DNA of 64,000 nt from NCBI RefSeq assembly GCF_006345805.1, contig NC_043004.1:51832001-51896000 (forward strand), in the 5' to 3' direction. This stretch comes from Octopus sinensis. Taxonomy: Eukaryota. A program made the translations under genes and the position numbers. Under the pieces are notes generated by a model that was not told the origin of the DNA, searched no databases, and saw only the letters and a list, made by a program, of their open reading frames with translations. Positions 6,345 to 61,153 of this stretch are shown one piece after another (the first letter of the stretch is position 1; each line of letters starts with the position of its first letter).

Positions 6345-7245
6345 AGGAAATGACCATGCTTTATATACTCAGAAAGGAATTAGATTGAAATTTACATCTG
6401 TAGACATACAAGAGGTGTAGTGGGATCATAATTAGGGTATAATGAAGGAGATAGACTTCTTATCAACAGCCATATGATAAGCACCAACAGCAAAGCAAAC
6501 AGGAATTAGATTATCTTGAATGTCTGGAAGGCTCTCTTAAGTAGTTGATAGTTTTATTACTTATATGACCTAATTAGCAATGAGGGTAAGTGTTCCTGAA
6601 AGCATACTAATATGAGTATGTAAGAACTGGGTTGAAATAGTTTAAGGAGCTCATACAGTTTCTCCATCAGAGTGAAGAGCAGACTGGATGATGCTTGAGT
6701 CAGAAGTGTGATACTCCATGACAGTGAGACCTGGGTTTTGAATGCAGAGCATTTGTGAAGATTAGCAAGAAATGAAGAGAAATGAAGAAATAGGCGCAGG
6801 AGTGGCTGTGTGGTAAGTAGCTTGTTTACCAACCACATGGTTCCGGGTTCAGTCCCACTGCGTGGCACCTTGGGCTAGTGTCTTCTACTATCGCCTCGGG
6901 CTGACCAAAGTCTTGTGAGTGGATTTAGTAGACGGAAACTGAAAGAAGCCCGTCGTATATATGTATATATATATATGTGTGTGTGTGTGTGTTTTGTGTG
7001 TCTGTGTTTGTCCCCCTAGCATTGCTTGACAACCGATGCTGGTATGTTTATGTCCCTGTTACTTAGCAGTTTGGCAAAAGAGACCGATAGAATAAGTACT
7101 GGGCTTACAAAAGAATAAGTCCCGGGGTCGAGTTGCTCGATTAAGGGCGGTGCTCCAGCATGGCCGCAGTCAAATGACTGAAACAAGTAAAAGAGAAAGA
7201 GAAAGAGAGTATTCTCTACTGTATGTATAATATTAGAGTGTATAA
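6345..7245 (+). pseudogene. Degraded RTE-clade LINE ORF fragment (reverse transcriptase C-terminal region), interrupted by a SINE
   Basis: Conceptual translation across stops and frameshifts gives TYKRCSGI, VVDSFYYL, VRTG..FKEL, SIRVKSRLDDA*VRSVILHDSETW...RLARNE, then SILYCMYN after the SINE. This resembles the RTE motifs VxxFxYLG and LxYGxETW. Confidence 0.75.
6791..7209 (+). mobile_element. SINE family 1, full length, young
   Basis: TAGGCGCAGGAGTGGCTGTGTGG head to GAAACAAGTAAAAGAG tail. Confidence 0.95.
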
Positions 7246-9019: not shown

Positions 9020-10145
9020 ATCATTACTGTCATTTATTATTTACTTTGCCAAGTTGGCATGGGTCAGATAAAGTTTATTTGAAGCAGATTTTCTACAACC
9101 AGATGCCTTACATGCCGTCAATCCTCACCCATTTCTGAGCAAAATAAAATTACCCCATAGCCAGACACATTCACGCTGAATATAGGAAAGGAAAGACCTT
9201 GCTTGTATGACAGTAATATCCATTTATAACTATCATCATGTGATGCTAAGACAAAGAGACAACCACATAAATATTATATATATGTATACACACATATATA
9301 TACACACATATATATATATTACACACACACATATATATATATATACACACACACATATATATATATATACACACACATATATTATATATACACACACATA
9401 TATATACACACACACATATATATATATATACACACCACACATATATATATATACACACACATATATATACACACATATATATATATACACACACACATAT
9501 ATATATATATATATACACACACATATATATATATACACACACACACATATATATATATATATACACACACACACATATATATATACACACACACACATAT
9601 ATATATACACACACACAATATATATATATATACACACACCACACACATATATATATATACACACACACACACACATAATATATATATATATACACACACA
9701 CATATATATATATATAATATATATACACATGGGGACGTTGAAAAGTTCCTAGTTTTATAGGTTTTGCAAAAGGCCTAGTTGGAGGCCCAACTTTCTAATT
9801 TCTTTTACAAGGCTTAGAAAAACTGAAGGACTGTTGCAGTGTGTGAATCTGAGAGGAGAATATGTTGAATAAAATCATAGTTAATTGATCTTCCTGTATT
9901 TTCTTTTATCTAAAACAAGCAACTTTCCAGTACCTCTTGTGTATGTATGTATGCATGTATGTATATATATGTATATACACACACACCACAGGCTTCTTTA
10001 AGTTTCCAACTATTGAATCCACTTGCAAGGTTTTGGTCAGCCTTGGGCTACAGTAGAAAACACTTGTCCAAGGTGCTACATAGTGGGACTGAACCTGGAA
10101 CCATGTGGTTGGGAAGCAAACTTCTTACTACTCAGCCACACCTGT
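9020..10145 (-). mobile_element. Chimeric SINE (family 1 head plus RTE-type tail) with a greatly expanded internal microsatellite and a nested MITE
   Basis: Tail/body 9020-9280, (TA)(CA) array 9280-9725, MITE 9726-9940, head 9990-10145. Confidence 0.7.
9726..9940 (+). mobile_element. Mariner-derived MITE or deletion derivative
   Basis: Ends GGGGACGTTGAAAAGTTCCT / AGCAACTTTCCAGTACCTCTTGT. The internal segment translates FLQGLEKLKDCCS..CVNLRGEYVE*, like the mariner transposase C-terminus. Confidence 0.7.
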
Positions 10146-15487: not shown

Positions 15488-16049
15488 ACCTGTTAACAAA
15501 GGCATTCAAACCATGACAATTCCACTTGTTTTGCATATGAACATCTACACTATTTGATGTATCTCCTTCTCCAAGATGGTAAAATCTGACCCGAGAGAAA
15601 TTTGGCTGCTGTTTCTAAATCAAACAACCAGGAAGAGACATACCTACAATGACTTAGCTTGTTTGAAGATGAAGGTTTTAGCAGTAACCACTAAAGATAA
15701 AAGCAAGAGAGAGCTTTTTGCCCTACAGTTTGATCTGCTAGGAATAGCAGTTAAATCTCTTAACTCTTTAGCATTCAGATTTCTTTGTCAAATCGTTGCT
15801 GTTATATTAAACTGGCGTATGCCCAAGTTTGGCCAAATGCATTTTTTTCAATATTATTTTTGCATCAATAGCCGGTTCTTTTGCTCACACTATTTCATCT
15901 CCACCTGCTTCAGATGCCAAGATATCAAAAATTGTCAAAATGTAGTACAACAGTTTTACTATGGAATGGTGAAACTATTTTTTCGTTTTCTGAAAAAGCA
16001 ACATTTTGGACTTACAACACTCTTGCATAATAGCAATGAAATGTAATGT

Positions 16050-21190: not shown

Positions 21191-22502
21191 GTGTGTGTGT
21201 GGGGGGGGGGGTTGTTTGGTTCCAGATAGTTCCTAAACAAGCAAACCTAAAATCAAAGTTGTTCCAAATCTGACCATCCCATTTTTTTTCTAGACATTGT
21301 ACGACTACATTATGAGATGTTTACTTCAACTCTTTTGGAGGAGATTTGGCTGCTACCTTTAGCAAATAGGAGGACCATACAAGGCTTGTATGATGGTTAA
21401 CTAGGGTTTGAATATGGTGTTTTTGTATACATGCAGTTAGTGGGTGCATATGTGGCTCTCTGTAGTTGATTGTATGTATGGGGTGAATGTGTGGCTTTGT
21501 GGATACATATGTTTACACAGAGTTGGCATGTATTAAATATGGCTGTATAAATGTTTGTAGAAATGTGTGTGTTTGTGTGTACATGCATGTTAATAGGAAC
21601 GTGTACAAATATGTTTCGTTATGTTTATTTTAACTATAGGCGCTTCTTGTTTGAACAAACTGGTTAGCCTGCACAGATAGAACGACAAAGTCAATGAAAG
21701 ATAGAATTTCCTCAAGGATTGGAAGAAATCTATCCAGATTTACTTTCACACACATACACATATACACACAGAAGATCTACATAAAGGAATAAAAACTACA
21801 AAAAAGTAAAAAGAAATATAAAACATTCATCATTATAGCAGATTTGAACATAAAATCTTTGGGTTTGGTGCAGATTAACAGCTGAATGCCAAGGGAAAGA
21901 GAGTTTACAGAAGTGGAAATAAAAGAAAGATGGAAGACAAGGGTTAATTTTGAATAAAACCATGGGACCCATTAGACTAGAGTGGTTTTTACAGGTGGAG
22001 AATAACAAACAAGAGCATCAACAATGATGACAAATCACTGATATTTAGTAGGGAAAAATAAAAATTCTAAGAGAAGAAATGGAAGACTGATAGAGGATTT
22101 TTTAAAACCAAATACCATCTTTGAACTATGTTTTGGAACCATCTTTAGAACTGACTGCACAAATGTTATAGAACAAATTGTTATTGATGTTATATGGTTC
22201 CATAGCAGCACCAATCCAACAGAACTATCATAAAGTGTTGTGGTGGTCACCATCCCAGACCTGTCCCTCAGAAGTATTGGGGCAGGTATGACTGTGTAAT
22301 CAAGAAGCTTGCCTTGCAACCACCTGATTTGGAGTTCAATGCTACTGCATGGCCTCTTGGACAAGTATTTCAAATTTTTTTCTCTAAAAACCTTCCTGAT
22401 TACTTCCGTAAACAACCTTGCCTAGGCTTGTGCCTCAGAAGTGGACTTTCTCAGTGCAACCCCATGGTCATTCATGATTGAAAGTGTCTTTACTCTTTAC
22501 CC

Positions 22503-25018: not shown

Positions 25019-25104
25019 TAGCTCAGTCGGTAGAGCATCAGACTTTTATGGGTCAACCTTAGAAGTAATCTGAGGGTCGCGGGTTCAAGTCCCTCTGCAG
25101 GGCG
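25019..25104 (+). tRNA. tRNA-Lys(UUU) with a 19-nt intron, lacking the 5' acceptor strand (probable pseudogene)
   Basis: A box TAGCTCAGTCGG, D arm, TCAGA-CT-TTT(25045-25047)-A, intron 25049-25067, A-TCTGA, B box GGTTCAAGTCC, 3' end GCAGGGCG, T6 terminator 25113-25118. The upstream 7 nt (CAAACAC) cannot pair with the 3' acceptor strand. Confidence 0.85.
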
Positions 25105-43382: not shown

Positions 43383-43553
43383 TTCAGTTTCTCTGAGTAG
43401 GCCCCATTCAACATCACATGCTCTACCACTTTTACCCATCAGCAGCCGCTTAGTAACAGTTATAGATTTTAACCACAAGTTCGGGAGTTTTGAATGGAGG
43501 GAGCTAGGTCAATTATATCGACTCCAGTACTCGGCTGGTACTTTATTTTATCG

Positions 43554-43734
43554 GTATTTCGTCTGCGTTACGTTGTGAGTTCAAATTCCGCCGAGGTCGA
43601 CTTTGCCTTTCATCCTTTCGGGGTCGATAAATTAAGTACCAGTTACGCACTGGGGTCGATGTAATAGACTATAACCTATGTCTGTCCTTGTTTGTCCCCT
43701 CTGTGTTTAGCCCCTTGTGGGTAATAAAGAAATA
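43554..43734 (+). mobile_element. SINE family 3, 5'-truncated, nested in an older family 3-related SINE
   Basis: Perfect 17-bp TSD GGTACTTTATTTTATCG (43537-43553, 43735-43751). Confidence 0.92.
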
Positions 43735-44094
43735 GGTACTTTATTTTATCGACCCAAAGAGAATGAAAAGCAAAGTCAACTGTGACAGATTTTGAACCGA
43801 AGAGTCGGAAGAAATACTGCAAAAAATGCTTTCCGAAACTAATGCTTCAGTCAGCTCATCTTAATAGTCATAACGACGATGATGATTTTAAATATTAATA
43901 CAAGACCAGCAATTTTCGGGAAGGAAGCAAGTGAATTACATCGAGCCGTACTTATTTCATCAGCCTGAAGAAGGTGGGAGACAAACTCATAACGCTTTCT
44001 AATTTGGGCAGAAGGCCACAAATTTGAGGAGGTTAGTTGAATATATCAACCTCAGTATTTAATCGTCCCCAGACAAATGGAAGAATAGGCTTAC

Positions 44095-44600
44095 CTCGAC
44101 GAGATATGAAGAGACGGAAGAAAAATAATAACGAGACAAACACTGAAGCAACAATAAATACAGAACATACATTTATATATATACAGAGAGAGAGGGAATA
44201 AATGATTATTAAAGAGAAACTTACATGAATTAAACACACACGAGGGGGAAAAAAAAACTGAGATGAAATAATATCCGTGACGAGAGTAATGTGTCCTCCT
44301 CAGATAAGTAGAGAGAATAAAACAAAGAGATTTCTTTTAAATATGAAATGTGTCAGAGGAGGACAAGAAGCAACAAACAGGAAGTTTTCGTAAGTCACAA
44401 AAAGATGTTTTGGGTTGGTCGTGAGGAGGAGGAGGAGGAGGGGGAGAGAGGAGGAGGAGGAAGGAGAAGACTGGGAAAGTAAATTGGCTCAAGAATTATA
44501 TACAAAGCCTACCCGGCCGACTTTGTGGCCTCATAACTTCCAGGAAAACACGGAGACTTTTTAACGAAACCTTCAACAAATAATCGCTTAGATCCTGTAG
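44095..44600 (-). promoter_or_regulatory. Candidate promoter and non-coding first exon
   Basis: CpG-retaining zone, GA-rich tract, CAGGAAGT ETS-like site, consensus minus-strand donor CGAG|GTAAGC with last exon base 44095. Confidence 0.4.
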
Positions 44601-46228
44601 AATGAATGAATGAATGAATGAATGCAAAGGTGATGGTGGTGGTGGGAAGTTTCGGAAAGTTCCCACGACCCGACATTTCCCGCCTCGTAACTTTCAGGAA
44701 ATTAATTCATTTTTTTTAATGAAATTTTTATACAAAAACCTTTCAAACGATTACGAAGAAATCTGGAGGCAAAATCTTTTGGAAGGGGGAATAGTTTCCG
44801 ATCAGACGGCCCACATAAGTTGGAATTTCTCCGTTTTGACGGGGATTTTTTTTCAATTTTTTCTTTTCAGTAGTCTTCGGAATGATGGGAGGCATTTTTT
44901 GACAAAAAAAAAAAAAGAAAATTTTGAAAATTTATGATTTTTTTCGCTCCAGCCATCCAACCCAGTCCGGACCGATTTTGACCATTTTTTTTTTTCTTTT
45001 TCACAACACACTTAAAAAAAAAACACGAGAGAAACCTTTTCGGTTAAATAAAAAAAAAGAAAGAAAATGAAACCTTTTTAGAGGAAAGTCTGATTTAAGA
45101 GAGATTTGGCTGTTGTTTCTAGCACATCGCAAGACCACCTTCCTTATTTTTTCTCACTGAAATATGTATTGTTTTTCAATATTTTCCCCCATAAACACAT
45201 TTATGCTATAAAAAAAGAAAACTTTGAAAATCTATGATTTTTTTTAGCCCCACCCCCTGACCCCGATTCTGTTATATAATTCTAAAATATTGGAAAGCCT
45301 GAGAAGATTTATTGCTGGGATTTATCCAGAGTGATTTTAATAAGAGATATGTAAAAGATGATTTATTTTGATAGCATACTTTTCTGTTAGAAAATGTATT
45401 TATCTAACACACATACCACGGCCTGGCTCGGTTGCGGTGCGAGGAAAAATTTAAATTACCATCATTTCTTTTTTTCTTTGCTTATATCGCAGCAATGGAC
45501 TACGCGTGTGTTACTTTGGCATCATCATTCCATAAAGTGTGTTTATGGGGAGAAAAATATTGAAAAACATCAATAGATGTGAGACTGAGAAAAGAAACGA
45601 AGAGAGAGTGCTTGGCCTGTGCTAGAAACAACAGCCAGATCTCCTTTAAATCACACATTTTCCTCTGAAATTATAATTTTTTTTTAACCTAAAATGTTTC
45701 TCTCGCAGGTTTTAAGAGCGTAGTAAGAAAAGAAAAAAAAAAGAAAATTGGCCAAAATCGATCCGGACTAAGGTGGTGAGGGGTGGCGGGAGTGAAAAAA
45801 ATTTTTTTTTTGTGAAAAGATGCCTCCCGTAACTCCAAAAACTGTGCTGAAAACAAAAAATTGGGAAAAATCCCCGTCAGAACGGAGAAATTCCAACTTA
45901 TGTGGGCCGTCTGATCCGAAACTCCGTTTTCCAGAAACTCCACCCAACGCCGCTTACTAATTTCTTTGTAATCGTAATCTACACCGTTTGAAGGGTATTT
46001 GTATAAAATTCCATTAAGAAATACCCATTTTCCTGAAAGTTACGGGAGGGGGGGGGTCGGGCCGTGTGATTTTTCCGAAAACCCTCTCCCTAACCCTGGA
46101 AAGAACTTTTCTGCAACAAATCTGGATATACACTCCATCTACAGGATCTAAGCAATTATTTGTCGAAAGTTCCATTAAAAAATATCGATGTTTCTGGAAG
46201 TTATGGGGCAACAAAGTCGGTGGGGTAT
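44512..46228. repeat. ~1.7-kb imperfect palindrome (fold-back element)
   Basis: Collinear inverted blocks: 44518-44600/46138-46221, 44650-44760/45960-46085, 44800-44850/45866-45916, 44950-45045/45690-45775, 45075-45135/45612-45670, 45160-45205/45530-45575; central spacer ~325 bp. Confidence 0.9.
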
Positions 46229-47060
46229 ATATCTGTAAATATGCCCATGGTATTAGGGGGGGTATACATCTGTAGTTATGCCTCTCTCTATATATATATA
46301 TATCTATCTCTCTATATAAAATCTATATATATATATACAATACAATACACACAGGTAAACATATTTTCCACTTGCCTCTAACGCACATACACGTGTATTT
46401 TGAAGGAAATACAATATTGTGAAAAGTAGTTCAAGGATTGTGACCCGTGTGAAGTAGACAAATAGGCATAAACACACACTTCCATTCATATATACATGCA
46501 AGTTTTAATACATGAAAAAAATATATATTCATTCATACATGTGTGCGTATACGGACACAGTATGTGTGTGTGTGTGAGTGTTCAGTCGCAAATTTACACA
46601 GAACTAAATATATGGCACAGACAGGCAGAAGTAAATGGTTTAAGTGTATGGAGAGAGAGAGAACGCAATGAGTCAAGTATTATTTTAAATAAAGAGGCAT
46701 TTGTTTCGACCAAGTGGAATCTAATGATAGAGATTTGTGCATGTACACACACAGACCTATAGCCACTCCTATATATATACCTATATAAATATACCTTACA
46801 TATATATGTGTATACACCTGTCCAGCCATAAACACTGACACACAATGAGAAAATAAATAACTCAATGGTTAGTCACATTTAGTAAAAACTAAATAACTGG
46901 TTTATTAAAAAGAAAAAAATGATAGTTAAGGGCAGATCAAATAAGTTCTTGATTTATAAGAATGATCTCTTCTTCCAGAGATGGTAGAACAATCACTTGG
47001 GAACAACTAGGGGACATAATCTCAAGTGATTGTCTGGAGATATTAAGGGAGCCCCTACAT

Positions 47061-47294: not shown

Positions 47295-48788
47295 CTTTAC
47301 ATGATCGCTGGACTTGCAAGAAACACCAACCTAATACCTCATAAATCACACTATAAGTTCTTACAGGAAAGATATAGTGAATAATATAGTTCTGGATATA
47401 CTCTGCATGATTAAAAAATGGGACGGTCATATGAGGAATGTCTTTGATTATGACAATCGATAGGGGATGAAACAACATTAACAGCTAGATACAAAATCAC
47501 CACCACCATTTCTGTATGTGGTTGCTAGATCTGCTAGAAATAGCAGCCAAATCACCCTATAATCTCACTTTTCTTTTTAAAGCAGTAGACATGGTTGTGT
47601 TAAGAAGCTTGCTTCCCAACCATGCAGTCTTGTGGGTACAGTCCCACTGCACAACACTCTGGGCAAGTGGTTTCTATTATAACCCTGGGTAGATCAAAAC
47701 TTTGAGTAAATTTGGTAGATCAAAACTGAAAGAAGCCTGTCGTGTATATATATGTGTGTGTGTGTTTGTCCTCCACCATTCACCACTGAACAAGTGTTGG
47801 TTTGTTTATGTTTGTGATAGCAGATTAGCAAGAGACAGAGAAAAAGTAACTGGGTTTTTACTTTAAAAAAAAAGAAAAACTGGGGCTGATTTGTTTGCCT
47901 AAACCCAGTATGGTTGCAACCCAATGACCCAAACAAGTAAAAAAGTAATAAGTTAGACAATGTTGTCATCCTAAATATAGTCTGACGTGATGGTCATAAA
48001 TGGAACAGCTTAAATCGTGGGTCTACACAATCAGAACTGAATTTGGGAACAATAATAATCAATGATAATGTTTCCACATGGTCACTTGGTCTGCAGAAAC
48101 AGCAGCTAAATCTATTTCAAATATCACACTACTTTCTTAGAAAAGGATGTGCGTATAATGTGGTCCTGGCTTCACCATACAAAAAAGGAAAAAGGCAAGA
48201 TGGTCGCGACTGGAATGCCTTTGATCATAGGTCTGCTAGATCAGGGTCAACCTTGAACTAAACAGCAACAATACTAGCACCACCATTGCCACCTCAACCA
48301 ATTCTGCCAAAATATAACCAACACAGTTACAACTGGATGTAAAACAAACCTCAAGTGAAAGTGCACACACCCATCATCATACGTCAACAAGATGATGACG
48401 ATGATGATGATGATGAAACAAAAAAAAATTAAGAAATGAGAAGAGGGTTAAGATGAAGTAGAAAAATAACCAACACATAAGACTATTTTTATCTCCATAG
48501 AAACCAAGCAGGCAGCAAGCAGCAGGTTCTTTAAGAAAAACAAAAAGAGTGAGGCATAAGTAAGTGAGTAGTGGCATCTCTAGTAATGTGGTAAGTGTAT
48601 TGGTAGATAGGTAGGTAGGGAATATAGGGGGCTTTGAACAAACTATGAGATTCTAAATTTGTCTTCCTTTCTTTCTTCAAATTTGCTGAAGTGGTTCAGT
48701 CCAAACATAATGGCTGTACAACATGTAGCCAGGAGACAAGCAGGGCCTCTCACCACCAACATCATCATCATCAACATTTAACGTGGCT

Positions 48789-51087: not shown

Positions 51088-52042
51088 TTGAGCGAGAAGT
51101 TGAAGTATTCTTCTCTAAAATGTGATCTGTCTGAAGAGGAACTGGTTGAGTACTTAAACAAGACGGACAAGGAAATGGAGAGGGGGAATGATGCAGTGGC
51201 AGCTAGAGAAAAAAATTGAAGAAATCAATCTGGAAGATTTGAGTGAGTTCAAGGAAATGCTTGAAAGGGAGGGGAATAATGTGAAGATGTTCTCCCCACA
51301 AAAAGTATTAAAGGACAAGGAAGAAAGGACGATTGTCTATAGAACCTATGCTACAGCAACAAGGAAAATTGAAGTAGTGTCAGAGGCATAGGTGGAAAAG
51401 GCACTGAGGTCAGCCTGGCAGGAGATATCATACCTTGCCAGGGAATAAAAGTGTGGAACGGTAGAGGTGCAGTTTAAGGAGATAGCAACTGCCAGACTGT
51501 ACTAAGCCACACCGCTGAAGACAGATGAGGTGATACTTCTGCCTGTGTACCTTGGGAGGCATAATTCCAGGGTTGAGGTAGAAGACATACCACCAGAAGT
51601 GAATACAGCCTGGCTGGTGGCTGCCATACTGCTGGGCATGGAGGAGAAGGTTGTGGTCCTGCAGGCCACCAGAACACCCAAAAGGAATTGGAGAGGACAA
51701 ACCCTTGAAATGATGATACAGGTCACAGAGGAGGACCTGGAAAAGATGGTAGAAAATATCTTAGTGGGTGAAACTACTTTGAAAGTTAGAGTGGAGGGAA
51801 GAATTCTATGGCGTTATAAATGTGGCCCTTCAGGCCACATTAGAGCAGAATGCCCTCCACCACTGGAAAAGGCTGGGGAGAGTGAAAGAGTGGTAAGTGC
51901 TCCACAGCCCATGGAGGAAAAGGATATGACCATCGAGGAAGAAACAGAGAACAAGAAAAGAAAAAGACACATGGTGAAGAATGACCCAACCCACACCCAC
52001 CCGGCGCCCACCCATACCCACTTTACCCCAACCACTTCCTAG
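51088..52042 (+). pseudogene. Gag-like ORF1 with RRM-like region and degenerate CCHC zinc knuckle
   Basis: One frameshift near 51215. ORFs 51188 and 51530 share a frame, with three in-frame stops. GTVEVQF, RVEVEDIPPEV, and LKVRVEGRILWRYKCGPSGHIRAEC (CX2CX4HX4C with the first Cys mutated). Confidence 0.82.
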
Positions 52043-53803: not shown

Positions 53804-54584
53804 CATATATAAAATGGTGTAGGTGTGGTTCTGATAGGCACAGTTTGAGATGCAGGCATGACTAATTAAAAAGCTTGCTTCCCAATCAGTTCTGGGTTCA
53901 CTTCCACTGCATGGTACCTTGGGTGTGTGTCTCCTACACCAGGCTAACCAAAGCCATGTGAGTGGATTCGGTAGATGGAAACTGAAAGAAGCCCGTCGTA
54001 TGTGTGTGTTCGCGTGCATGCTTGCCTTGGTCATAAATGAATGGCAGATATAATTTAGAAAAAAAAAACCCCGTCATTTACATCACTGAAAAGGCATATA
54101 AGGAAAATTTCATTAAAAAAATATGCATTTAACAAAGTGTGATGTGAGGTGGGGGAATAATAATCCTTCCTACTATAGGCACAAGGCCTGAAATTTCGAG
54201 GGAGGGGATCAGTTGATTACATTGACCCCAGTACATAACTGGCACTTATTTCATCGACTCCAAAAGGATGAAAGGTGGAGTTGACATCGGCAGAATTTTA
54301 ATTCATAACATAAGGACAGGTGAAAATGATTTCTTTATTTATTAATAATAATCATTTCTATTATAGGTACAAGGCCAGGATTTTGCAGGGAGAGGGACAG
54401 TCGATCACATCGACTACTCCACTGGTACTTAATTTATCGACCTCAAAAGGATGAAAGGCAAAGTCGACCAAGTGGAATTTGAACTCAGAACATAAGGACG
54501 GACGAATGCCATCAAGCATTTCCGCCTGGCCTGCTAATGATTCTGCCAGCTCACCACCTTATGAAAATAGGCAAGACTTCCTAT

Positions 54585-55205
54585 TGTACCCAAAACACCT
54601 CTTTTCTTTTATTTAATTTTTTTTTTTTTTGTTTCTACACAAAAAACCCCCATTTCGGCTACATGAATCTGCAAAAAATTGGCAAAACCCAGCATTTTGA
54701 AATCACACACCCACCACTAAATTTTTACATTTTTAACTTTTTTCAGAAATTTTCTTTTTCAAAATATGTGGAAAAATACGGAGATTATAATTCTGAAAAA
54801 ATTTCCAAACATTTTTGTTAAATTTTTTTTCACAAATGTTTTATATGTTACAATATGCGGAAAAATACAGAGATTATGATTCTAAAAAAATTTCCGAAAA
54901 TTCTTCTACTTAGGGTTAGGTTTAGGGAAAAAAGTGAAAAATGAAGAAATTGTTGCGGGGAGGAGGGTCCAAAAAATTTCAAAATTCCGATTTTTGGCAA
55001 TTTTCCGGAATCTCCGTATCCGAAAAGGTGGGTTTTGGGGAAAAAATACATAAAAAAAAAATTAATAATTTGCGAGAAAATGGTATGGGGACTTTCCCGA
55101 AAATATTTTCCATTCCTTTACCCACGTAATTGTAATCTACATCTAAAATGTATCTCACATAAATTTCATTAAAAGCTATGTATTTTAAAGAAAATTATGA
55201 GGAGA
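54585..55205. repeat. Second A/T-tract-rich imperfect palindrome with a central direct repeat, and a segment related to the 44512 palindrome
   Basis: 54590-54740 inverted against 54930-55080; direct repeat AATATG.GGAAAAATAC.GAGATTAT..TTCT.AAAAAATTTCC at about 54763 and 54852; GTAAT.GTAATCTACA block at 55125 matches 45968. Confidence 0.7.
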
Positions 55206-56295
55206 ATCAAAGTCTCTTTAATACACACACAGTTCTGCAATCATGTCCCGTTTGCATTTCAAACGTATAAATATATTTTGTTTACATTTGAAGTCTTGCA
55301 TTTTTAAAAAATTACATTTTCAGCCTAAGGAATGGAACAAATTTTGAAATGTTCAGAAAGTGAAACAGTATAATTCTAGTGAATTTATTGAACACACCAC
55401 GTTGCTTTCATTATTTCGATGGGATATTCTGGGAAGCAATTGTCTTCATGTTGATACTTTTTATAAGTCTCCCTCCACGAGAGCCTCTAGGCGATAGCTT
55501 CACTCTGCTAAAGATAGCAGCGAAATCTACAAAGCGTACGACTCCCTTAAAAAGGAAAGGATACATTGTAACCTGAATATGCAACAGAAAGTGAATGCTT
55601 TACGAAAACGATTGAAAATTCCTGAAAAAAAATTCATCCTTAAGTATATTCCAAAATCGATAAACTATTCCTTCACCCCAAAAGTAAAAGCCACTCAAGT
55701 TTTCGATGAAACTCCAGTGTTTGACCCGAGAAAAAATTTTTTTAGATTGTGCAATTAGTTGTAAAATAACATGTAGTAAACGAATATGAAAAAAAAATAA
55801 AATGCGCGCTGGCGAACGGAGGGCGGGGATAGGGCTCGGAACATTCATATTCGTTTACTACATGTTTTACACCTATTACACTCCCCCCCCCATTTTTGTG
55901 ACCGGGTGTCGAAGTAGGGTTACTGAATCCGTGTGAATTATCCGAGTCTGCACCCCACCCACCACCCATCACAAAATTTGAAAAAAAAAAATAGTGTACT
56001 AAGTGTAAAATAATGTGTAGTAAATGAATATGAAGAAAAAAATATGCCTCCTATTGTTAATGAAAAGAAAGGTGCAAAAAGACATTAAATAAAGTCATCT
56101 GAATAAAAGGCAGAATACGACTGGCATGTATGTGGTCAAAAGTGTGTACCCGGTTAGAGACCGCCTTGGTGCTCTTAGGCAAGAGCACCAAACATAAAGC
56201 ATAAGTTGCCGGATCAACAGTTGTCACACTGGAATGGATATAAAACATTGAAACTACAACGACAATAAAGCCTATAACTCTAGCACGTATCTTAC

Positions 56296-57412: not shown

Positions 57413-58902
57413 TAGGTGGACGTCGGAGTTAGGAAGCACCAACAAGTTGGAATTTCTCTGTTTGGTGGGAATCTCAGATTTTTTTTTCGCAGTACCCCTG
57501 GAAATACTCAAGAGAATCTTTTCAACAAAAAACAATTTGCGAAAAACGCCTATATCTATCGATATAGTGCGTGTGTGTTTGTCCCCCTAGCATTGCTTGA
57601 CAACCGATGCTGGTGTGTTTATGTCCCCGTCACTTAGCGGTTCGGCAAAAGAGACCGATAGAATAAGTACTGGGCTTACAAAGAATAAATCCCAAGGTCG
57701 AGTTGCTCGACTAAAGGCGGTGCTCCAGCATGGCCGCAGTCAAATGACTGAAACAAGAATATATATATATATATATATATATATAGTAGAAGACAATAGC
57801 CGAAGATGCCACGCAGTGAGACTGAACCCGGAACCATGTGATTGGGAAGAAAACGTCTTATCACAGCAATGCCTGTGCCTCTACCTACACCTTATAATGA
57901 AAATCGGTGAGCAGGCGGCCACTGTCTGGAGGAAGAAAAGGGACGATCAAAACTTGAGTATGGAGTGAATGCAGTTGAAATTTCCCTCTCAAAAGGAGAA
58001 AGGAAAACAATAAAAAAAAGAAAAACAAAAGCTACCTAGCGGTAATGGTTGGCAGCTTTCGGAAAGAAGGGGAGATAATTTGAAAACTAAAAAAATTAAA
58101 TATTTTTTTAAGTCGTTAACAATTATCTATGCTTTTATTTTTGAAAAGGAACACATTTTAATTGCTAAACATTTTGTGTACCATTCAGTGTATCAATGCA
58201 ACCTCTCGACTATATTACCCCGAATTTTATAGCCTTGAGGCCATTTTATTTTTGATCGTATTTCCTTAATCAGAGCTGGCAGGGAGCTAAAATAAAATTA
58301 TATACTAAATAACAGCTAAGAACAGAACCTGACTTGCTTGACCTACTATATAAACAGTAGCTAAATCACCCTCAACCCACATCCTACCTTCTTATAAAAA
58401 AAGATACATTTACTAGTATAGTTAATCTCTGATATATAAAATGATAGTAACGACTGTGATACGTTTAATCAGAGATCCTCCGTTAAATCTGAGTTGAGCT
58501 GAGACTCAACAAGTCAGTTTACAAACACTTAAGTCTCATATAACGCTTGAAGGACTATGAAATCGACTATTATCCACCTCCTATAATTCGTGGTCAAGTA
58601 CCAATGTTAGAATTACATGGTCAGGTACGATCCTTTGAACGTCGAAGCGGTCTCCAACCTTTTTATTACCATGGACCATGCAAGACAATTTTGTCACGGA
58701 CCGGGGAATAACGCGCATAACAAAATACAAATAAGTGCTGAGTATATAATCTAGGTAATCAATTGTTTTGAATCTCAGAAATACCATTGTCGCGAATGGC
58801 ATTTCTGAGACTCAAACCGATTGATTGCCATAACTAATTATTACATTGTATTATGCTCGTTATTTCTACTAATATTACATTGTAATTCATATAATCGAAC
58901 TC

Positions 58903-59680: not shown

Positions 59681-61153
59681 TCGAACGGAATTAAATTAAT
59701 AATGATTGATTATTGGTTAATTAACGATCATTAATAGCGCGTCCAACATGATGCTCAGCTTCTATTTCTTCCTATCTCTTTAGGTTCAAATTCCGCGAAG
59801 GTAGGCCTTGCTTGTCATCCTTTTGGGGACGATGAAATAAGTTCCTCTCAAGTACTGGGGTCTATGTTTAACTATTTAAACCTCTCCTAAAATTGCTGCT
59901 CCTGCGCCAAAATTAGGAAGAATTAATTATTAATAGCGGTGTCGGGTAGAATTCAAAACCTGCCCCAGGGACTCGGTGAAATTATATGAAGATACTAGTT
60001 ATTTACAATGAGCATGTTTTTGTGTAAAAACATCAAAGAGTTGTTGGCACATGTGGGATGTTGACATCACTTTGCCACAGTTCACACCAATAACAGCAGC
60101 AGCAGCAAGTACAACAACAACAATAAAACCATAAATGAAAAATAAGAGGTAAAAGAAAAAACAGCAGCAGAAGCGACATGAGTCAATGAAGGTCTCTACA
60201 TAGTCTTTTGATCTGCTGGAAATAGCAGCCAACTCCTGTTGGACAACGATTTTGGAGATAGCTGTTACAAATTAAATCGAATTTCTTAGTTTTGTTGGGT
60301 TTTTTTGCCGTATTTTTCGTAACATCAAAATAATATGCAATTCGCATTAAGAAAGCTTATCTTTTTCAAACTTTTTAACTATCTCCTTTCATCGTGCCTC
60401 CAGAATAACTGTCTCCAATAAAATCAATTATTTTCTATCTCAGTATTTTTCATTTTATATTACACATTCTGAAACGCTTGTAATTCACACACTTTAATAA
60501 AAGGAAAATTTAAAATATACCAAAACATAATCATTGCTGCTAGATTGCCCTTGATTATCAGTAACAATCATAACTAAATCGGTTTCGATGATCAATCAGT
60601 ATTCCAATTGTTCGATCAACTGACCTATCTATCTACTCGTTTAATTAACGTGTAAGTGGCTGAATATTTCACAGACTTATATCTACAATGTAATTCTAAC
60701 TAATGACAAAGCTGTTTTACTCACAAGTCTTTGGGTCGGCCTAAATGCTAATCAGTGGAGCCGTATCCTAGGACTTTTACGACTGCGATGCGAACTTCTT
60801 AAACCACTCGGCCAAGCCTGTGAACATTATAACTATCACCATTACAAACACAGATCACAAACAGAAGCACCATACACCACCGTTACAAATAGTTACCACT
60901 CTGCAACTACAACATGATCAACACAATAAGATCATCATAACATTGTCTATACTACCAACTAACAACACTGCGCTTTTTTTTTTTTTTTTAAGGAACTCTG
61001 ACTTCGTCCCAAGAAGCAAACAAAACTACAACCTCCACCGCTAATAATAAACCAGCGTCGATTGCTATAACACAAATAAAAAGTATCAAGCAACAGTTTA
61101 TAAAAAAAACTATACTACAAGAGACTAAGCCACAAAAAAAACTCTCAACACTG

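What the first reader, a model, noticed from the sequence alone, without database searches (positions are those of the whole stretch)
44512..46228. Ancient 1.7-kb palindrome with a near-invariant 51-bp core between otherwise diverged arms
Seen: two ~700-bp arms are collinear inverted copies around a ~325-bp spacer, with many substitutions and indels. Yet GATCAGACGGCCCACATAAGTTGGAATTTCTCCGTT[T/C]TGACGGGGATTTTT (44800-44850 versus 45916-45866) differs at one of 51 positions and keeps its CpGs. A second well-kept block ends in GCTTAGATCCTGTAGA. Each arm has internal repeats C[A/G]TAACTT[C/T]CAGGAAAA..TTTTTAA.GAAA. Both arms contain the same fragment of another interspersed repeat (GAGAT.TGGCTGTTGTTTCTAGCAC, about 45099 and 45620), which suggests the inversion arose after that insertion. 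The structure abuts the promoter-like zone at 44095-44600. Inference: the core is held by selection (paired protein sites, cruciform or long-range RNA duplex) or by arm-to-arm gene conversion; a decayed Foldback/Mutator-like element is the null model.
Basis: partly seen in the sequence, partly recalled or inferred. Interest (0 to 1): 0.7.

Follow-up and report, generated by a model that had tools for sequence, protein, structure and literature searches.

The report
Decayed foldback-like repeat palindrome
The 1.7-kb palindrome is real, but it is best read as an old, decaying, non-coding foldback-type repeat in repeat-rich DNA, and its well-kept 51-bp core is only marginally better preserved than chance, so it is most likely ordinary.

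Summary
Window 44510-45205 and 45531-46227 are collinear inverted copies around a 325-bp middle, 85% identical where aligned (91 substitutions, 39 indels). The 51-bp core matches at 50 of 51 positions.

Permuting the alignment events gives p = 0.01-0.17 for a patch that good, depending on alignment settings and on whether indels count. The core is the homopolymer-free part of a patchy alignment that contains other well-kept patches.

The arms are built of repeat modules. A third, 68%-identical solo copy of the core module lies at 57419-57541. Weaker relatives lie at 60245-60320 and 54.07-55.21 kb. In those copies the 51-bp core is 31/51 identical, no better than its flanks. Only the 19-nt centre AAGTTGGAATTTCTCCGTT stands out (18/19 in one copy).

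I found no gene, RNA family, coding signal or CpG/GC-rich island at or beside the structure, and no target-site duplication.

Best reading: a decayed non-autonomous foldback-like element, or an in-situ inverted duplication of such a repeat. The core reflects chance, lower local mutability and possibly short-tract gene conversion. Copy number and orthologues could not be checked, because no cephalopod DNA was reachable.

The parts
44510..45205 (+). Left arm of the palindrome (696 bp)
   Evidence: Local and global alignment to the reverse complement of 45531-46227: 85.4% identity excluding gaps, collinear throughout.
45206..45530 (.). Middle domain / spacer (325 bp), non-coding. Its first ~70 bp (45210-45275) is a direct copy of arm module C.
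   Evidence: Self-complementarity is not above shuffles (score 21 vs 19+-4). 45210-45244 is 94% identical to 44910-44944.
45531..46227 (-). Right arm of the palindrome (697 bp)
44800..44850 (+). 51-bp core, left copy, inside module B (about 44785-44925)
   Evidence: 50/51 identical to the right copy. It forms a continuous 51-bp duplex with one G.U if transcribed.
45866..45916 (-). 51-bp core, right copy
44576..44601 (+). Second well-kept block (partner at 46138-46163 on the minus strand), 25/26
44511..44606 (+). Module A copy 1, left arm (outer sub-repeat containing CATAACTTCCAGGAAA...TTTTTAACGAAA). Followed by a (GAAT)6 microsatellite that the right arm lacks.
   Evidence: nhmmer with a profile of the four palindrome copies; alignment.
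44664..44764 (+). Module A copy 2, left arm
45970..46065 (-). Module A copy 2, right arm
   Evidence: direct repeat D2.
46130..46226 (-). Module A copy 1, right arm
44910..44985 (+). Module C (AAAGAAAAYTTTGAAAATYTATGATTTTTTT + C-rich stretch + GTCCGGACCGATTTTG). Mirror copy at about 45740-45800 lacks 24 bp; extra direct copy at 45210-45275.
45103..45123 (-). Motif D, a fragment of a separate short interspersed repeat, left arm
   Evidence: 8 matches in the window against 0 expected; alignment of copies.
45621..45641 (+). Motif D, right arm
57419..57541 (+). Third, solo, diverged copy of module B (about 68% identity), between a TA microsatellite and a SINE
   Evidence: nhmmer E = 3.6e-7 with the arm profile and 3.7e-8 with a module B profile built from the arms only. 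Smith-Waterman score 39 against 10+-1.8 in 300 shuffles.
60245..60320 (+). Possible fourth, weak copy of the core part of module B, next to a motif D copy at 60215-60235
   Evidence: E = 0.021 once the 57-kb copy is in the profile, but only E = 1.2 with the arms alone. Tentative.
54071..55209 (.). Probable very diverged relative. Module A-like units at 54075-54156(-) and 55131-55209(-). Between them a small collinear inverted repeat, 54584-54745 / 54927-55080, with B/C-like sequence. Interrupted by two SINEs at 54156-54530.
   Evidence: Inverted repeats I1, I3, I4 and I7; blastn 45968-46048 vs 55126-55204, E = 2e-5. Non-circular profile hits are weak singly (E = 0.07-0.66), but the best non-self hits of modules A and B cluster in this 1.2 kb.

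Best explanation
The locus is an old, imperfect, non-coding palindrome made of repeat modules. I read it as a decayed, non-autonomous foldback-type DNA element. It has long, internally repetitive inverted arms of about 700 bp and a 325-bp non-coding middle domain. It sits in SINE-rich, gene-poor DNA of what looks like an octopus genome.

After the arms became separate copies they decayed roughly neutrally, to K2P about 0.16. That suggests tens of millions of years, if the arms began identical and typical invertebrate rates apply; this dating is inference. The decay is patchy. Indels and substitutions pile up in the many A/T homopolymer runs and microsatellites. The sequence-complex, homopolymer-free stretch of module B has stayed nearly intact.

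The 51-bp core is therefore the best patch of a patchy alignment, possibly helped by a short arm-to-arm gene-conversion tract. It is not a host-selected element.

Shown: the palindrome, its modular make-up, diverged relatives of the modules elsewhere in the window, the marginal statistics, and the absence of coding, RNA-family or promoter-type (GC/CpG) signals. Inferred: origin as a mobile foldback element rather than an in-situ inverted duplication, and neutrality of the core.
For: Architecture: two collinear arms of about 696 bp and a 325-bp middle, each arm with two direct copies of a roughly 95-nt unit at its outer end. This matches the foldback layout described for Galileo (TIRs 18-1250 bp, mean 668, with internal tandem repeats; PMC3573991) and Tetris (modular, non-autonomous; PMC4079207).

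Family: module B has a robust third copy at 57419-57541. Probable relatives lie at 60.25 kb and 54.07-55.21 kb, and the latter also contains an inverted arrangement.

Core statistics: permutation p = 0.01-0.17. Other well-kept patches exist: 25/26 at 44576-44601 and 33/35 at 44910-44944 vs 45210-45244. In the extra copies the whole core is 31/51 identical, like its flanks.

No function signals: the ORF across the core has no homologue, no Pfam hit and no record. There is no Rfam family. The local fold of the core is not above shuffles. No GC or CpG island is adjacent. No gene was detected in the window's ORFs.

Inverted repeat pairs are common in this window: 15 pairs with arms of at least 120 bp lie within 3 kb of each other.
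Against: No target-site duplication of 5-12 bp was found at or near the ends; only a TA on each side is compatible. No second full-length copy exists in the 64 kb. Copy number in the genome could not be checked. Relatives other than the 57-kb copy are individually weak. The centre of the core, AAGTTGGAATTTCTCCGTT, is 18/19 in the 57-kb copy, so some constraint or low mutability of that short stretch is possible. CpG observed/expected in the arms (0.86-1.06) is higher than in the window (0.50), which neutral decay does not explain.
Confidence: 0.55

Rival explanations
1. In-situ inverted duplication. A roughly 700-bp stretch of composite repeat DNA was copied once in inverted orientation next to itself, for example by template switching or fold-back repair. 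The structure never moved as a unit. Decay afterwards is the same as in the best explanation.
For: No target-site duplication around the whole structure or around either arm. No second full copy in the window. The spacer starts with a direct duplicate of the neighbouring arm module (45210-45275 vs 44910-44985), so local duplication has happened at this locus. A foreign repeat fragment (motif D) sits at mirror positions in both arms.
Against: The outer ends carry paired direct sub-repeats, as in foldback elements. A probable relative at 54-55 kb also shows an inverted arrangement of related modules. Short duplications such as TA cannot be excluded.
Confidence: 0.3
2. The core is a recent short gene-conversion tract between the arms, which reset about 50-60 bp to identity. 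No function is involved.
For: The stretch is 36 bp perfect and 50/51 overall, inside arms at about 80-85% identity. Identity is patchy elsewhere too. The arms are only 325 bp apart.
Against: The statistical excess is marginal. At 85% identity, recombination between the arms should be inefficient; this is my own knowledge and was not tested. One locus cannot separate conversion from chance.
Confidence: 0.15
3. The core, or its 19-nt centre, is a site the element itself needed, for example a secondary transposase-binding site present in both arms. It was kept by selection for mobility while the rest of the arms drifted.
For: The centre AAGTTGGAATTTCTCCGTT is 18/19 in the independent 57-kb copy and 13/19 in the weak 60-kb copy. 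GAATTTCT is invariant in all four copies. Internal TIR repeats of Galileo carry secondary transposase-binding sites (PMC3573991 and PMC4079207).
Against: Only two extra copies are available, one of them weak. A 15-nt perfect run within a 124-column alignment at 68% identity is not rare; my estimate is about 0.1. The site lies about 290 bp from the ends. No transposase is known for the family. The rest of the 51 bp is not conserved in the other copies.
Confidence: 0.12
4. Host-level function. The paired cores are selected as symmetric protein-binding sites, or the transcribed hairpin acts as a long double-stranded RNA (an ADAR editing substrate or small-RNA source) linked to a neighbouring promoter.
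For: If transcribed, the element folds into a hairpin of -719 kcal/mol against -395+-8 for shuffles. The core forms a continuous 51-bp helix with one G.U pair. All three core CpGs are kept.
Against: No gene, promoter-type composition or RNA family is nearby. The excess identity is marginal. The core is not conserved as a unit in other copies, and those copies sit beside a microsatellite and SINEs, not near detectable genes. A survey that included Octopus bimaculoides reports no dedicated endogenous siRNA pathway in molluscs (PMC12479628). Any inverted repeat pair would make double-stranded RNA, and this window has 15.
Confidence: 0.05
5. Two independent insertions of the same roughly 700-bp element in opposite orientation, 325 bp apart.
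For: Inverted pairs of independently inserted SINEs are frequent in this window.
Against: Neither arm has its own target-site duplication. Both arms share the same nested foreign fragment with the same derived variant. There is no other full copy in the window.
Confidence: 0.05

Closest known systems
[quoted passage not shown]
   Same: Inverted arms of about 700 bp, within the Galileo TIR range of 18-1250 bp (mean 668). Direct sub-repeats inside the arms. A non-coding middle domain. Modular, rearranged relatives. No coding capacity, as in non-autonomous 2-TIR copies (PMC3573991 and PMC4079207).
   Different: No 7-10-bp target-site duplication was found. Each arm has only two sub-repeat copies rather than an array. 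No autonomous partner or transposase is known. No second full copy was seen. The host is a mollusc rather than an insect. Membership is not established; only the architecture is shared.
[quoted passage not shown]
   Same: Non-coding, with inverted termini and A/T-rich low-complexity interiors. TA on both sides is compatible with a Tc1/mariner-type target duplication.
   Different: At 1.7 kb, with arms making up 80% of the element, it is far larger than typical MITEs, which are under about 800 bp. Copy number is unknown, and the TA flanks could be chance.
Genomic palindromes kept homogeneous by arm-to-arm gene conversion (for example the ampliconic palindromes of primate sex chromosomes; my own knowledge)
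   Same: Two inverted arms with a short spacer.
   Different: Those palindromes are tens of kb to Mb long, carry genes, and have arms more than 99.9% identical. Here the arms are 85% identical and non-coding, with at most one roughly 50-bp tract possibly converted.
Inverted repeat pairs as double-stranded RNA / ADAR substrates (for example inverted Alu pairs; my own knowledge)
   Same: A transcript through the locus would fold into a long imperfect hairpin.
   Different: There is no evidence of transcription here. The property is shared by any inverted pair, and this window has 15.

Membership tests
Foldback-type DNA transposon (FB / Galileo / Tetris architecture) | Long terminal inverted repeats (hundreds of bp) around a short non-coding middle domain | tested here: met
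   Arms of 696 and 697 bp, middle of 325 bp, 85% identity. ORFs have no homologues or domains.
Foldback-type DNA transposon (FB / Galileo / Tetris architecture) | Direct or tandem sub-repeats inside the inverted arms | tested here: met
   Two copies per arm of a roughly 95-nt unit, spaced about 155-160 bp. This is fewer than in classical FB arrays.
Foldback-type DNA transposon (FB / Galileo / Tetris architecture) | Target-site duplication flanking the element (7 bp for Galileo, 8-10 bp for Tetris) | tested here: not met
   A systematic search with boundaries shifted by about 15-45 bp, lengths of 2-12 bp and 1-2 mismatches allowed for long ones found no duplication paired with matching termini. 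Age could hide it only partly.
Foldback-type DNA transposon (FB / Galileo / Tetris architecture) | Multiple dispersed copies sharing the same termini | tested here: inconclusive
   Within the 64 kb there are only partial, diverged relatives of modules A and B. No cephalopod genome was reachable: a control scan for the abundant SINE found only 2 metagenome contigs.
Foldback-type DNA transposon (FB / Galileo / Tetris architecture) | An autonomous partner encoding the transposase (P, Mutator or other superfamily) | not testable with these tools
   No transposase ORF in the window and no access to the genome.
MITE | Small size (under about 800 bp) with short terminal inverted repeats | tested here: not met
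   The element is 1718 bp and the arms make up 81% of it.
MITE | High copy number with superfamily-specific target-site duplication | tested here: inconclusive
   TA on both sides is compatible but not significant. Copy number is unknown.
Palindrome homogenised by gene conversion | Arm-to-arm identity near 100% over the whole arm | tested here: not met
   85.4% identity excluding gaps, 130 events.
Structured RNA gene or known RNA family (miRNA, snoRNA, tRNA-derived SINE, ribozyme) | Match to a curated covariance model, or a significantly stable local fold | tested here: not met
   No Rfam match at gathering score in the region, and only chance-level matches at E up to 10. ARAGORN found nothing. 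Core fold z-scores are -0.3 to -1.4.
Selected cis-regulatory element (conserved non-coding element) | Conservation above neutral flanks across copies or orthologues | tested here: inconclusive
   Between arms, p = 0.01-0.17. In two other copies the core is 31/51 identical, the same as its flanks; only the 19-nt centre is 18/19 in one. Orthologues could not be reached.
SINE superfamily with a conserved central domain (CORE, V, Deu, Ceph, Meta; recalled from memory) | tRNA/5S/7SL-derived head with pol III boxes upstream of the conserved domain | tested here: not met
   There is no tRNA-like or other small-RNA match within the arms.

The most novel reading that the evidence does not exclude
The 19-51-bp core, present symmetrically in both arms and perfectly paired in the hairpin, is a domesticated functional site. 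It could be a paired protein-binding motif or a defined double-stranded RNA helix used by the host, for example as an editing or processing substrate. In that reading it derives from an old foldback-type repeat family whose centre AAGTTGGAATTTCTCCGTT is kept across copies.
Probability: 0.05. Interest if true: 0.55.

Novelty: new member of a known kind. Interest (0 to 1): 0.15.

Why it matters
If the ordinary reading is right, the locus matters only as an example of a modular, foldback-like repeat family in a cephalopod-type genome. DNA-element families there are poorly described, and this one could be added to a repeat library. It also shows that a striking 'invariant core' inside a diverged palindrome can arise without selection, when complex sequence is flanked by indel-prone homopolymers. 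Only if the core proved conserved across many copies or species, or bound or edited in vivo, would it bear on regulatory or double-stranded RNA biology in cephalopods.

Tried and rejected
(1) Coding. The 107-aa ORF 44614-44937 across the core, and a 1101-aa chimera of six-frame arm ORFs, have no homologues, no Pfam hit and no record. Coding was rejected.

(2) Known RNA. Rfam at gathering and at E-value thresholds and ARAGORN gave nothing. The local fold of the core is not significant.

(3) External copies. The core 22-mer is absent from metagenome, viral and prokaryote genome collections. A control with the window's abundant SINE 20-mer found only 2 metagenome contigs, and only one of them looks SINE-like. 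These negatives therefore say nothing about copy number in the host genome.

(4) Reaching the source or an orthologous locus through neighbouring ORFs. The gag-like ORF 51530-52042 is not on record. Its only homologue lies on Logan contigs under 2 kb. This was a dead end.

(5) Target-site duplications around the whole element and around each arm: none found.

(6) A palindrome continuing through the spacer: not significant.

(7) A hammerhead or Penelope-type ribozyme reading of CTGATCCGAAAC in the core was considered by eye. It was rejected because there is no helix II and no Rfam hit.

(8) Literature search for cephalopod foldback elements: no paper found.

Full report
**Observation**

The region was read directly and scanned for repeats. 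A gapped alignment of 44510-45205 against the reverse complement of 45531-46227 is collinear from end to end. It has 533 identical columns of 769 and 85.4% identity over the 624 ungapped columns. There are 91 substitutions (44 transitions, 47 transversions), 39 indel events and a K2P distance of 0.163. The arms are 696 and 697 bp and the spacer is 325 bp.

- The 51-bp core (44800-44850 vs 45916-45866) differs at one position. It occurs nowhere else in the window at up to three mismatches.
- The second block ending in GCTTAGATCCTGTAGA is 25/26.
- The CNTAACTTYCAGGAAA sub-repeat occurs twice in each arm.
- The fragment shared with another interspersed repeat is real. GCTAGAAAYARCAGCCARATC matches 8 places in the window against none expected, including mirror positions in the two arms.

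**Is the core more than chance?**

I reduced the arm alignment to a string of matches and events and permuted it. The longest stretch with at most one event is reached in 1-4% of permutations when indels count as events. It is reached in 2-17% when only substitutions count. The result depends on the alignment parameters.

In 50-column windows, identity runs from 0.66 to 0.86 along the arms and peaks at 0.94 over the core. The core is the only long homopolymer-free stretch in that part of the arms. Its neighbours are A/T runs and a (GAAT)6 microsatellite, where most indels lie.

Other well-kept patches exist: 25/26 at 44576-44601, and 33/35 between 44910-44944 and its direct copy at 45210-45244. 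Twelve of 30 CpG sites are kept in both arms, so keeping all three in the core has a probability of about 0.06 on its own. The excess identity is marginal.

**Anatomy**

Each arm is modular.

- Module A is a roughly 95-nt unit present twice at the outer end of each arm: 44511-44606, 44664-44764, 45970-46065(-) and 46130-46226(-).
- Module B (about 44785-44925 and its mirror) contains the core.
- Module C (44910-44985 and its mirror, which lacks 24 bp) has an extra direct copy at the start of the spacer, 45210-45275.
- Motif D is the foreign interspersed fragment.

The spacer as a whole is not self-complementary beyond chance.

**Relatives in the window**

A profile of the two arms finds a third copy of module B at 57419-57541 (E = 3.6e-7). 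A profile of module B built from the arms only gives E = 3.7e-8. Smith-Waterman scores 39 against 10+-1.8 in shuffles, at about 68% identity. This copy is solo and lies between a TA microsatellite and a SINE.

A weaker copy of the core part lies at 60245-60320. It has E = 0.021 only after the 57-kb copy is added to the profile, and E = 1.2 without it.

The best non-self hits of module A (55204-55136, E = 0.15; 54120-54075, E = 0.66) and the second-best of module B (54687-54620, E = 0.07) all fall within one 1.2-kb stretch. That stretch contains a small collinear inverted repeat of its own, 54584-54745 / 54927-55080. Two inserted SINEs interrupt it. The hits are weak singly but unlikely to cluster by chance.

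The palindrome is therefore built from an old repeat family rather than from unique DNA.

**The core in the other copies**

In both extra copies the 51 core positions are 31/51 identical to the arms. The adjacent flanks give 4/10 and 14/20 in one copy and 8/10 and 11/20 in the other.

Only the 19-nt centre AAGTTGGAATTTCTCCGTT is well kept: 18/19 in the 57-kb copy and 13/19 in the 60-kb copy. GAATTTCT is invariant in all four. In the 57-kb copy one core CpG has decayed to TpG and another is also lost.

On the little evidence available, the 51-bp core is not conserved as a unit across copies. A short centre may be.

**Function signals**

None was found.

- The 107-aa ORF over the core has no homologue in 5.8 billion proteins, no Pfam domain and no record.
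- A chimera of all arm reading frames finds nothing.
- Rfam finds nothing at the gathering score and only chance-level matches at E up to 10. ARAGORN finds nothing.
- The core's own fold is no better than shuffles.
- The flanking 'promoter-like zone' is purine-rich low-complexity sequence at 35-42% G+C.
- The window's long ORFs are microsatellite or SINE translations plus one gag-like fragment.

Transcribed, the whole element would fold into a hairpin of -719 kcal/mol, against -395+-8 for shuffles. The core would form a continuous 51-bp helix with one G.U pair. Any inverted pair would do the same, and the window holds 15 with arms of at least 120 bp within 3 kb, mostly SINE pairs. A survey of mollusc small RNAs that included Octopus bimaculoides found no dedicated endogenous siRNA pathway (PMC12479628).

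**Origin**

The architecture matches foldback-type elements. Galileo TIRs range from 18 to 1250 bp (mean 668). They carry internal tandem repeats that hold secondary transposase-binding sites, and the element makes 7-bp target duplications (PMC3573991). Tetris is a modular non-autonomous foldback with 8-10-bp duplications. The foldback shape is thought to evolve independently in several superfamilies (PMC4079207).

Against membership, I found no target-site duplication around the element or around either arm. Only TA on both sides is compatible. No second full copy is present in the window. An in-situ inverted duplication of a composite repeat is a serious rival (0.3), and the direct duplicate of module C at the arm/spacer junction fits it. 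I lean to the foldback reading, because of the paired sub-repeats at the outer ends and the second inverted arrangement at 54-55 kb. The two readings cannot be separated without the genome.

**What could not be done**

No cephalopod genome is reachable with these tools. The core 22-mer is absent from the metagenome, viral and prokaryote collections. A control scan with the window's abundant SINE found only two metagenome contigs, one of them a chance match, so those negatives are uninformative. The gag-like ORF 5 kb away is not on record, and its only homologue lies on Logan contigs under 2 kb. The assignment to an octopus-like genome rests on my recollection of the SINE sequence and was not tested.

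**Verdict**

The palindrome is real and old, and it is ordinary. It is a decayed foldback-like or inverted-duplicated repeat whose '51-bp invariant core' is only marginally better preserved than expected and is not conserved as a unit in other copies. Selection by the host is not supported (about 5%). A short gene-conversion tract, or an element-level site at the 19-nt centre, remains possible.

Noticed in passing
window 15599-15619(-), 15737-15757(+), 21343-21363(-), 47533-47553(+), 55507-55527(+), 60215-60235(+), also 47316-47336(+): A short (about 45-55 bp) interspersed repeat with consensus near TTTGATCTGCTAGAAATAGCAGCCAAATCTC..TAAATC. It contains a mini-hairpin, CTGCTA-GAAA-TAGCAG. There are 8 matches at up to 3 mismatches against 0 expected, and about 11 by profile. 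The two copies at 15.6-15.76 kb form a small inverted pair 117 bp apart, and 47316/47533 are direct copies about 217 bp apart. The family was not identified.
   Followed up: partly
window 54584-54745 / 54927-55080, centre 54738-54905: A second, smaller collinear inverted repeat. It has two tandem 89-bp units at its centre (54738-54816 and 54827-54905, 78% identical), each carrying GGAAAAATACRGAGATTATRATTCT. Two tandem SINE copies are inserted just upstream, at 54156-54530.
   Followed up: partly
window 46222-46245 and 46259-46282: The last 6 nt of the right arm plus 18 nt of flank (GGGGTATATATCTGTAAATATGCC) recur 37 bp downstream as GGGGTATACATCTGTAGTTATGCC (21/24). This looks like a small tandem duplication across the right junction.
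   Followed up: no
window 44510-46227 versus the whole window: CpG observed/expected is 1.06 (left arm), 0.86 (right arm) and 0.86 (spacer), against 0.50 for the 64-kb window. The palindrome is not CpG-depleted like its surroundings. Counts are small and the difference is unexplained.
   Followed up: no
window 25019-25095 (+): Rfam tRNA match (35.1 bits, above the gathering score), but ARAGORN calls no tRNA. It is probably the tRNA-derived head of a SINE.
   Followed up: no
window 51530-52042 (+): A 170-aa ORF with a weak zinc-knuckle match (a gag-like retroelement fragment). Its only database homologue (56% identity) lies on Logan contigs under 2 kb from runs SRR11869384, SRR11869385 and SRR11869390.
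   Followed up: partly
window 43508-43797: Two inverted-repeat pairs of SINE-like sequence (43579-43635 / 43741-43797 and 43508-43548 / 43629-43669) lie just upstream of the finding. Inverted SINE pairs are common throughout the window (15 pairs with arms of at least 120 bp within 3 kb).
   Followed up: partly
window 44600-44625: A (GAAT)6 microsatellite is present only in the left arm. The right arm has unrelated sequence of similar length at the mirror position.
   Followed up: no
window about 600-2450 and 9200-9750: Long TA/TG-type microsatellite-like arrays that create spurious long ORFs rich in Y, I, C and V.
   Followed up: no
L005 (metagenome contig Ga0066187_1002493, 6613 bp) 6537-6587: A 37% G+C metagenome contig ends in a 51-bp, 90% match to the window's SINE. 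It may be stray cephalopod or mollusc DNA in a metagenome.
   Followed up: no
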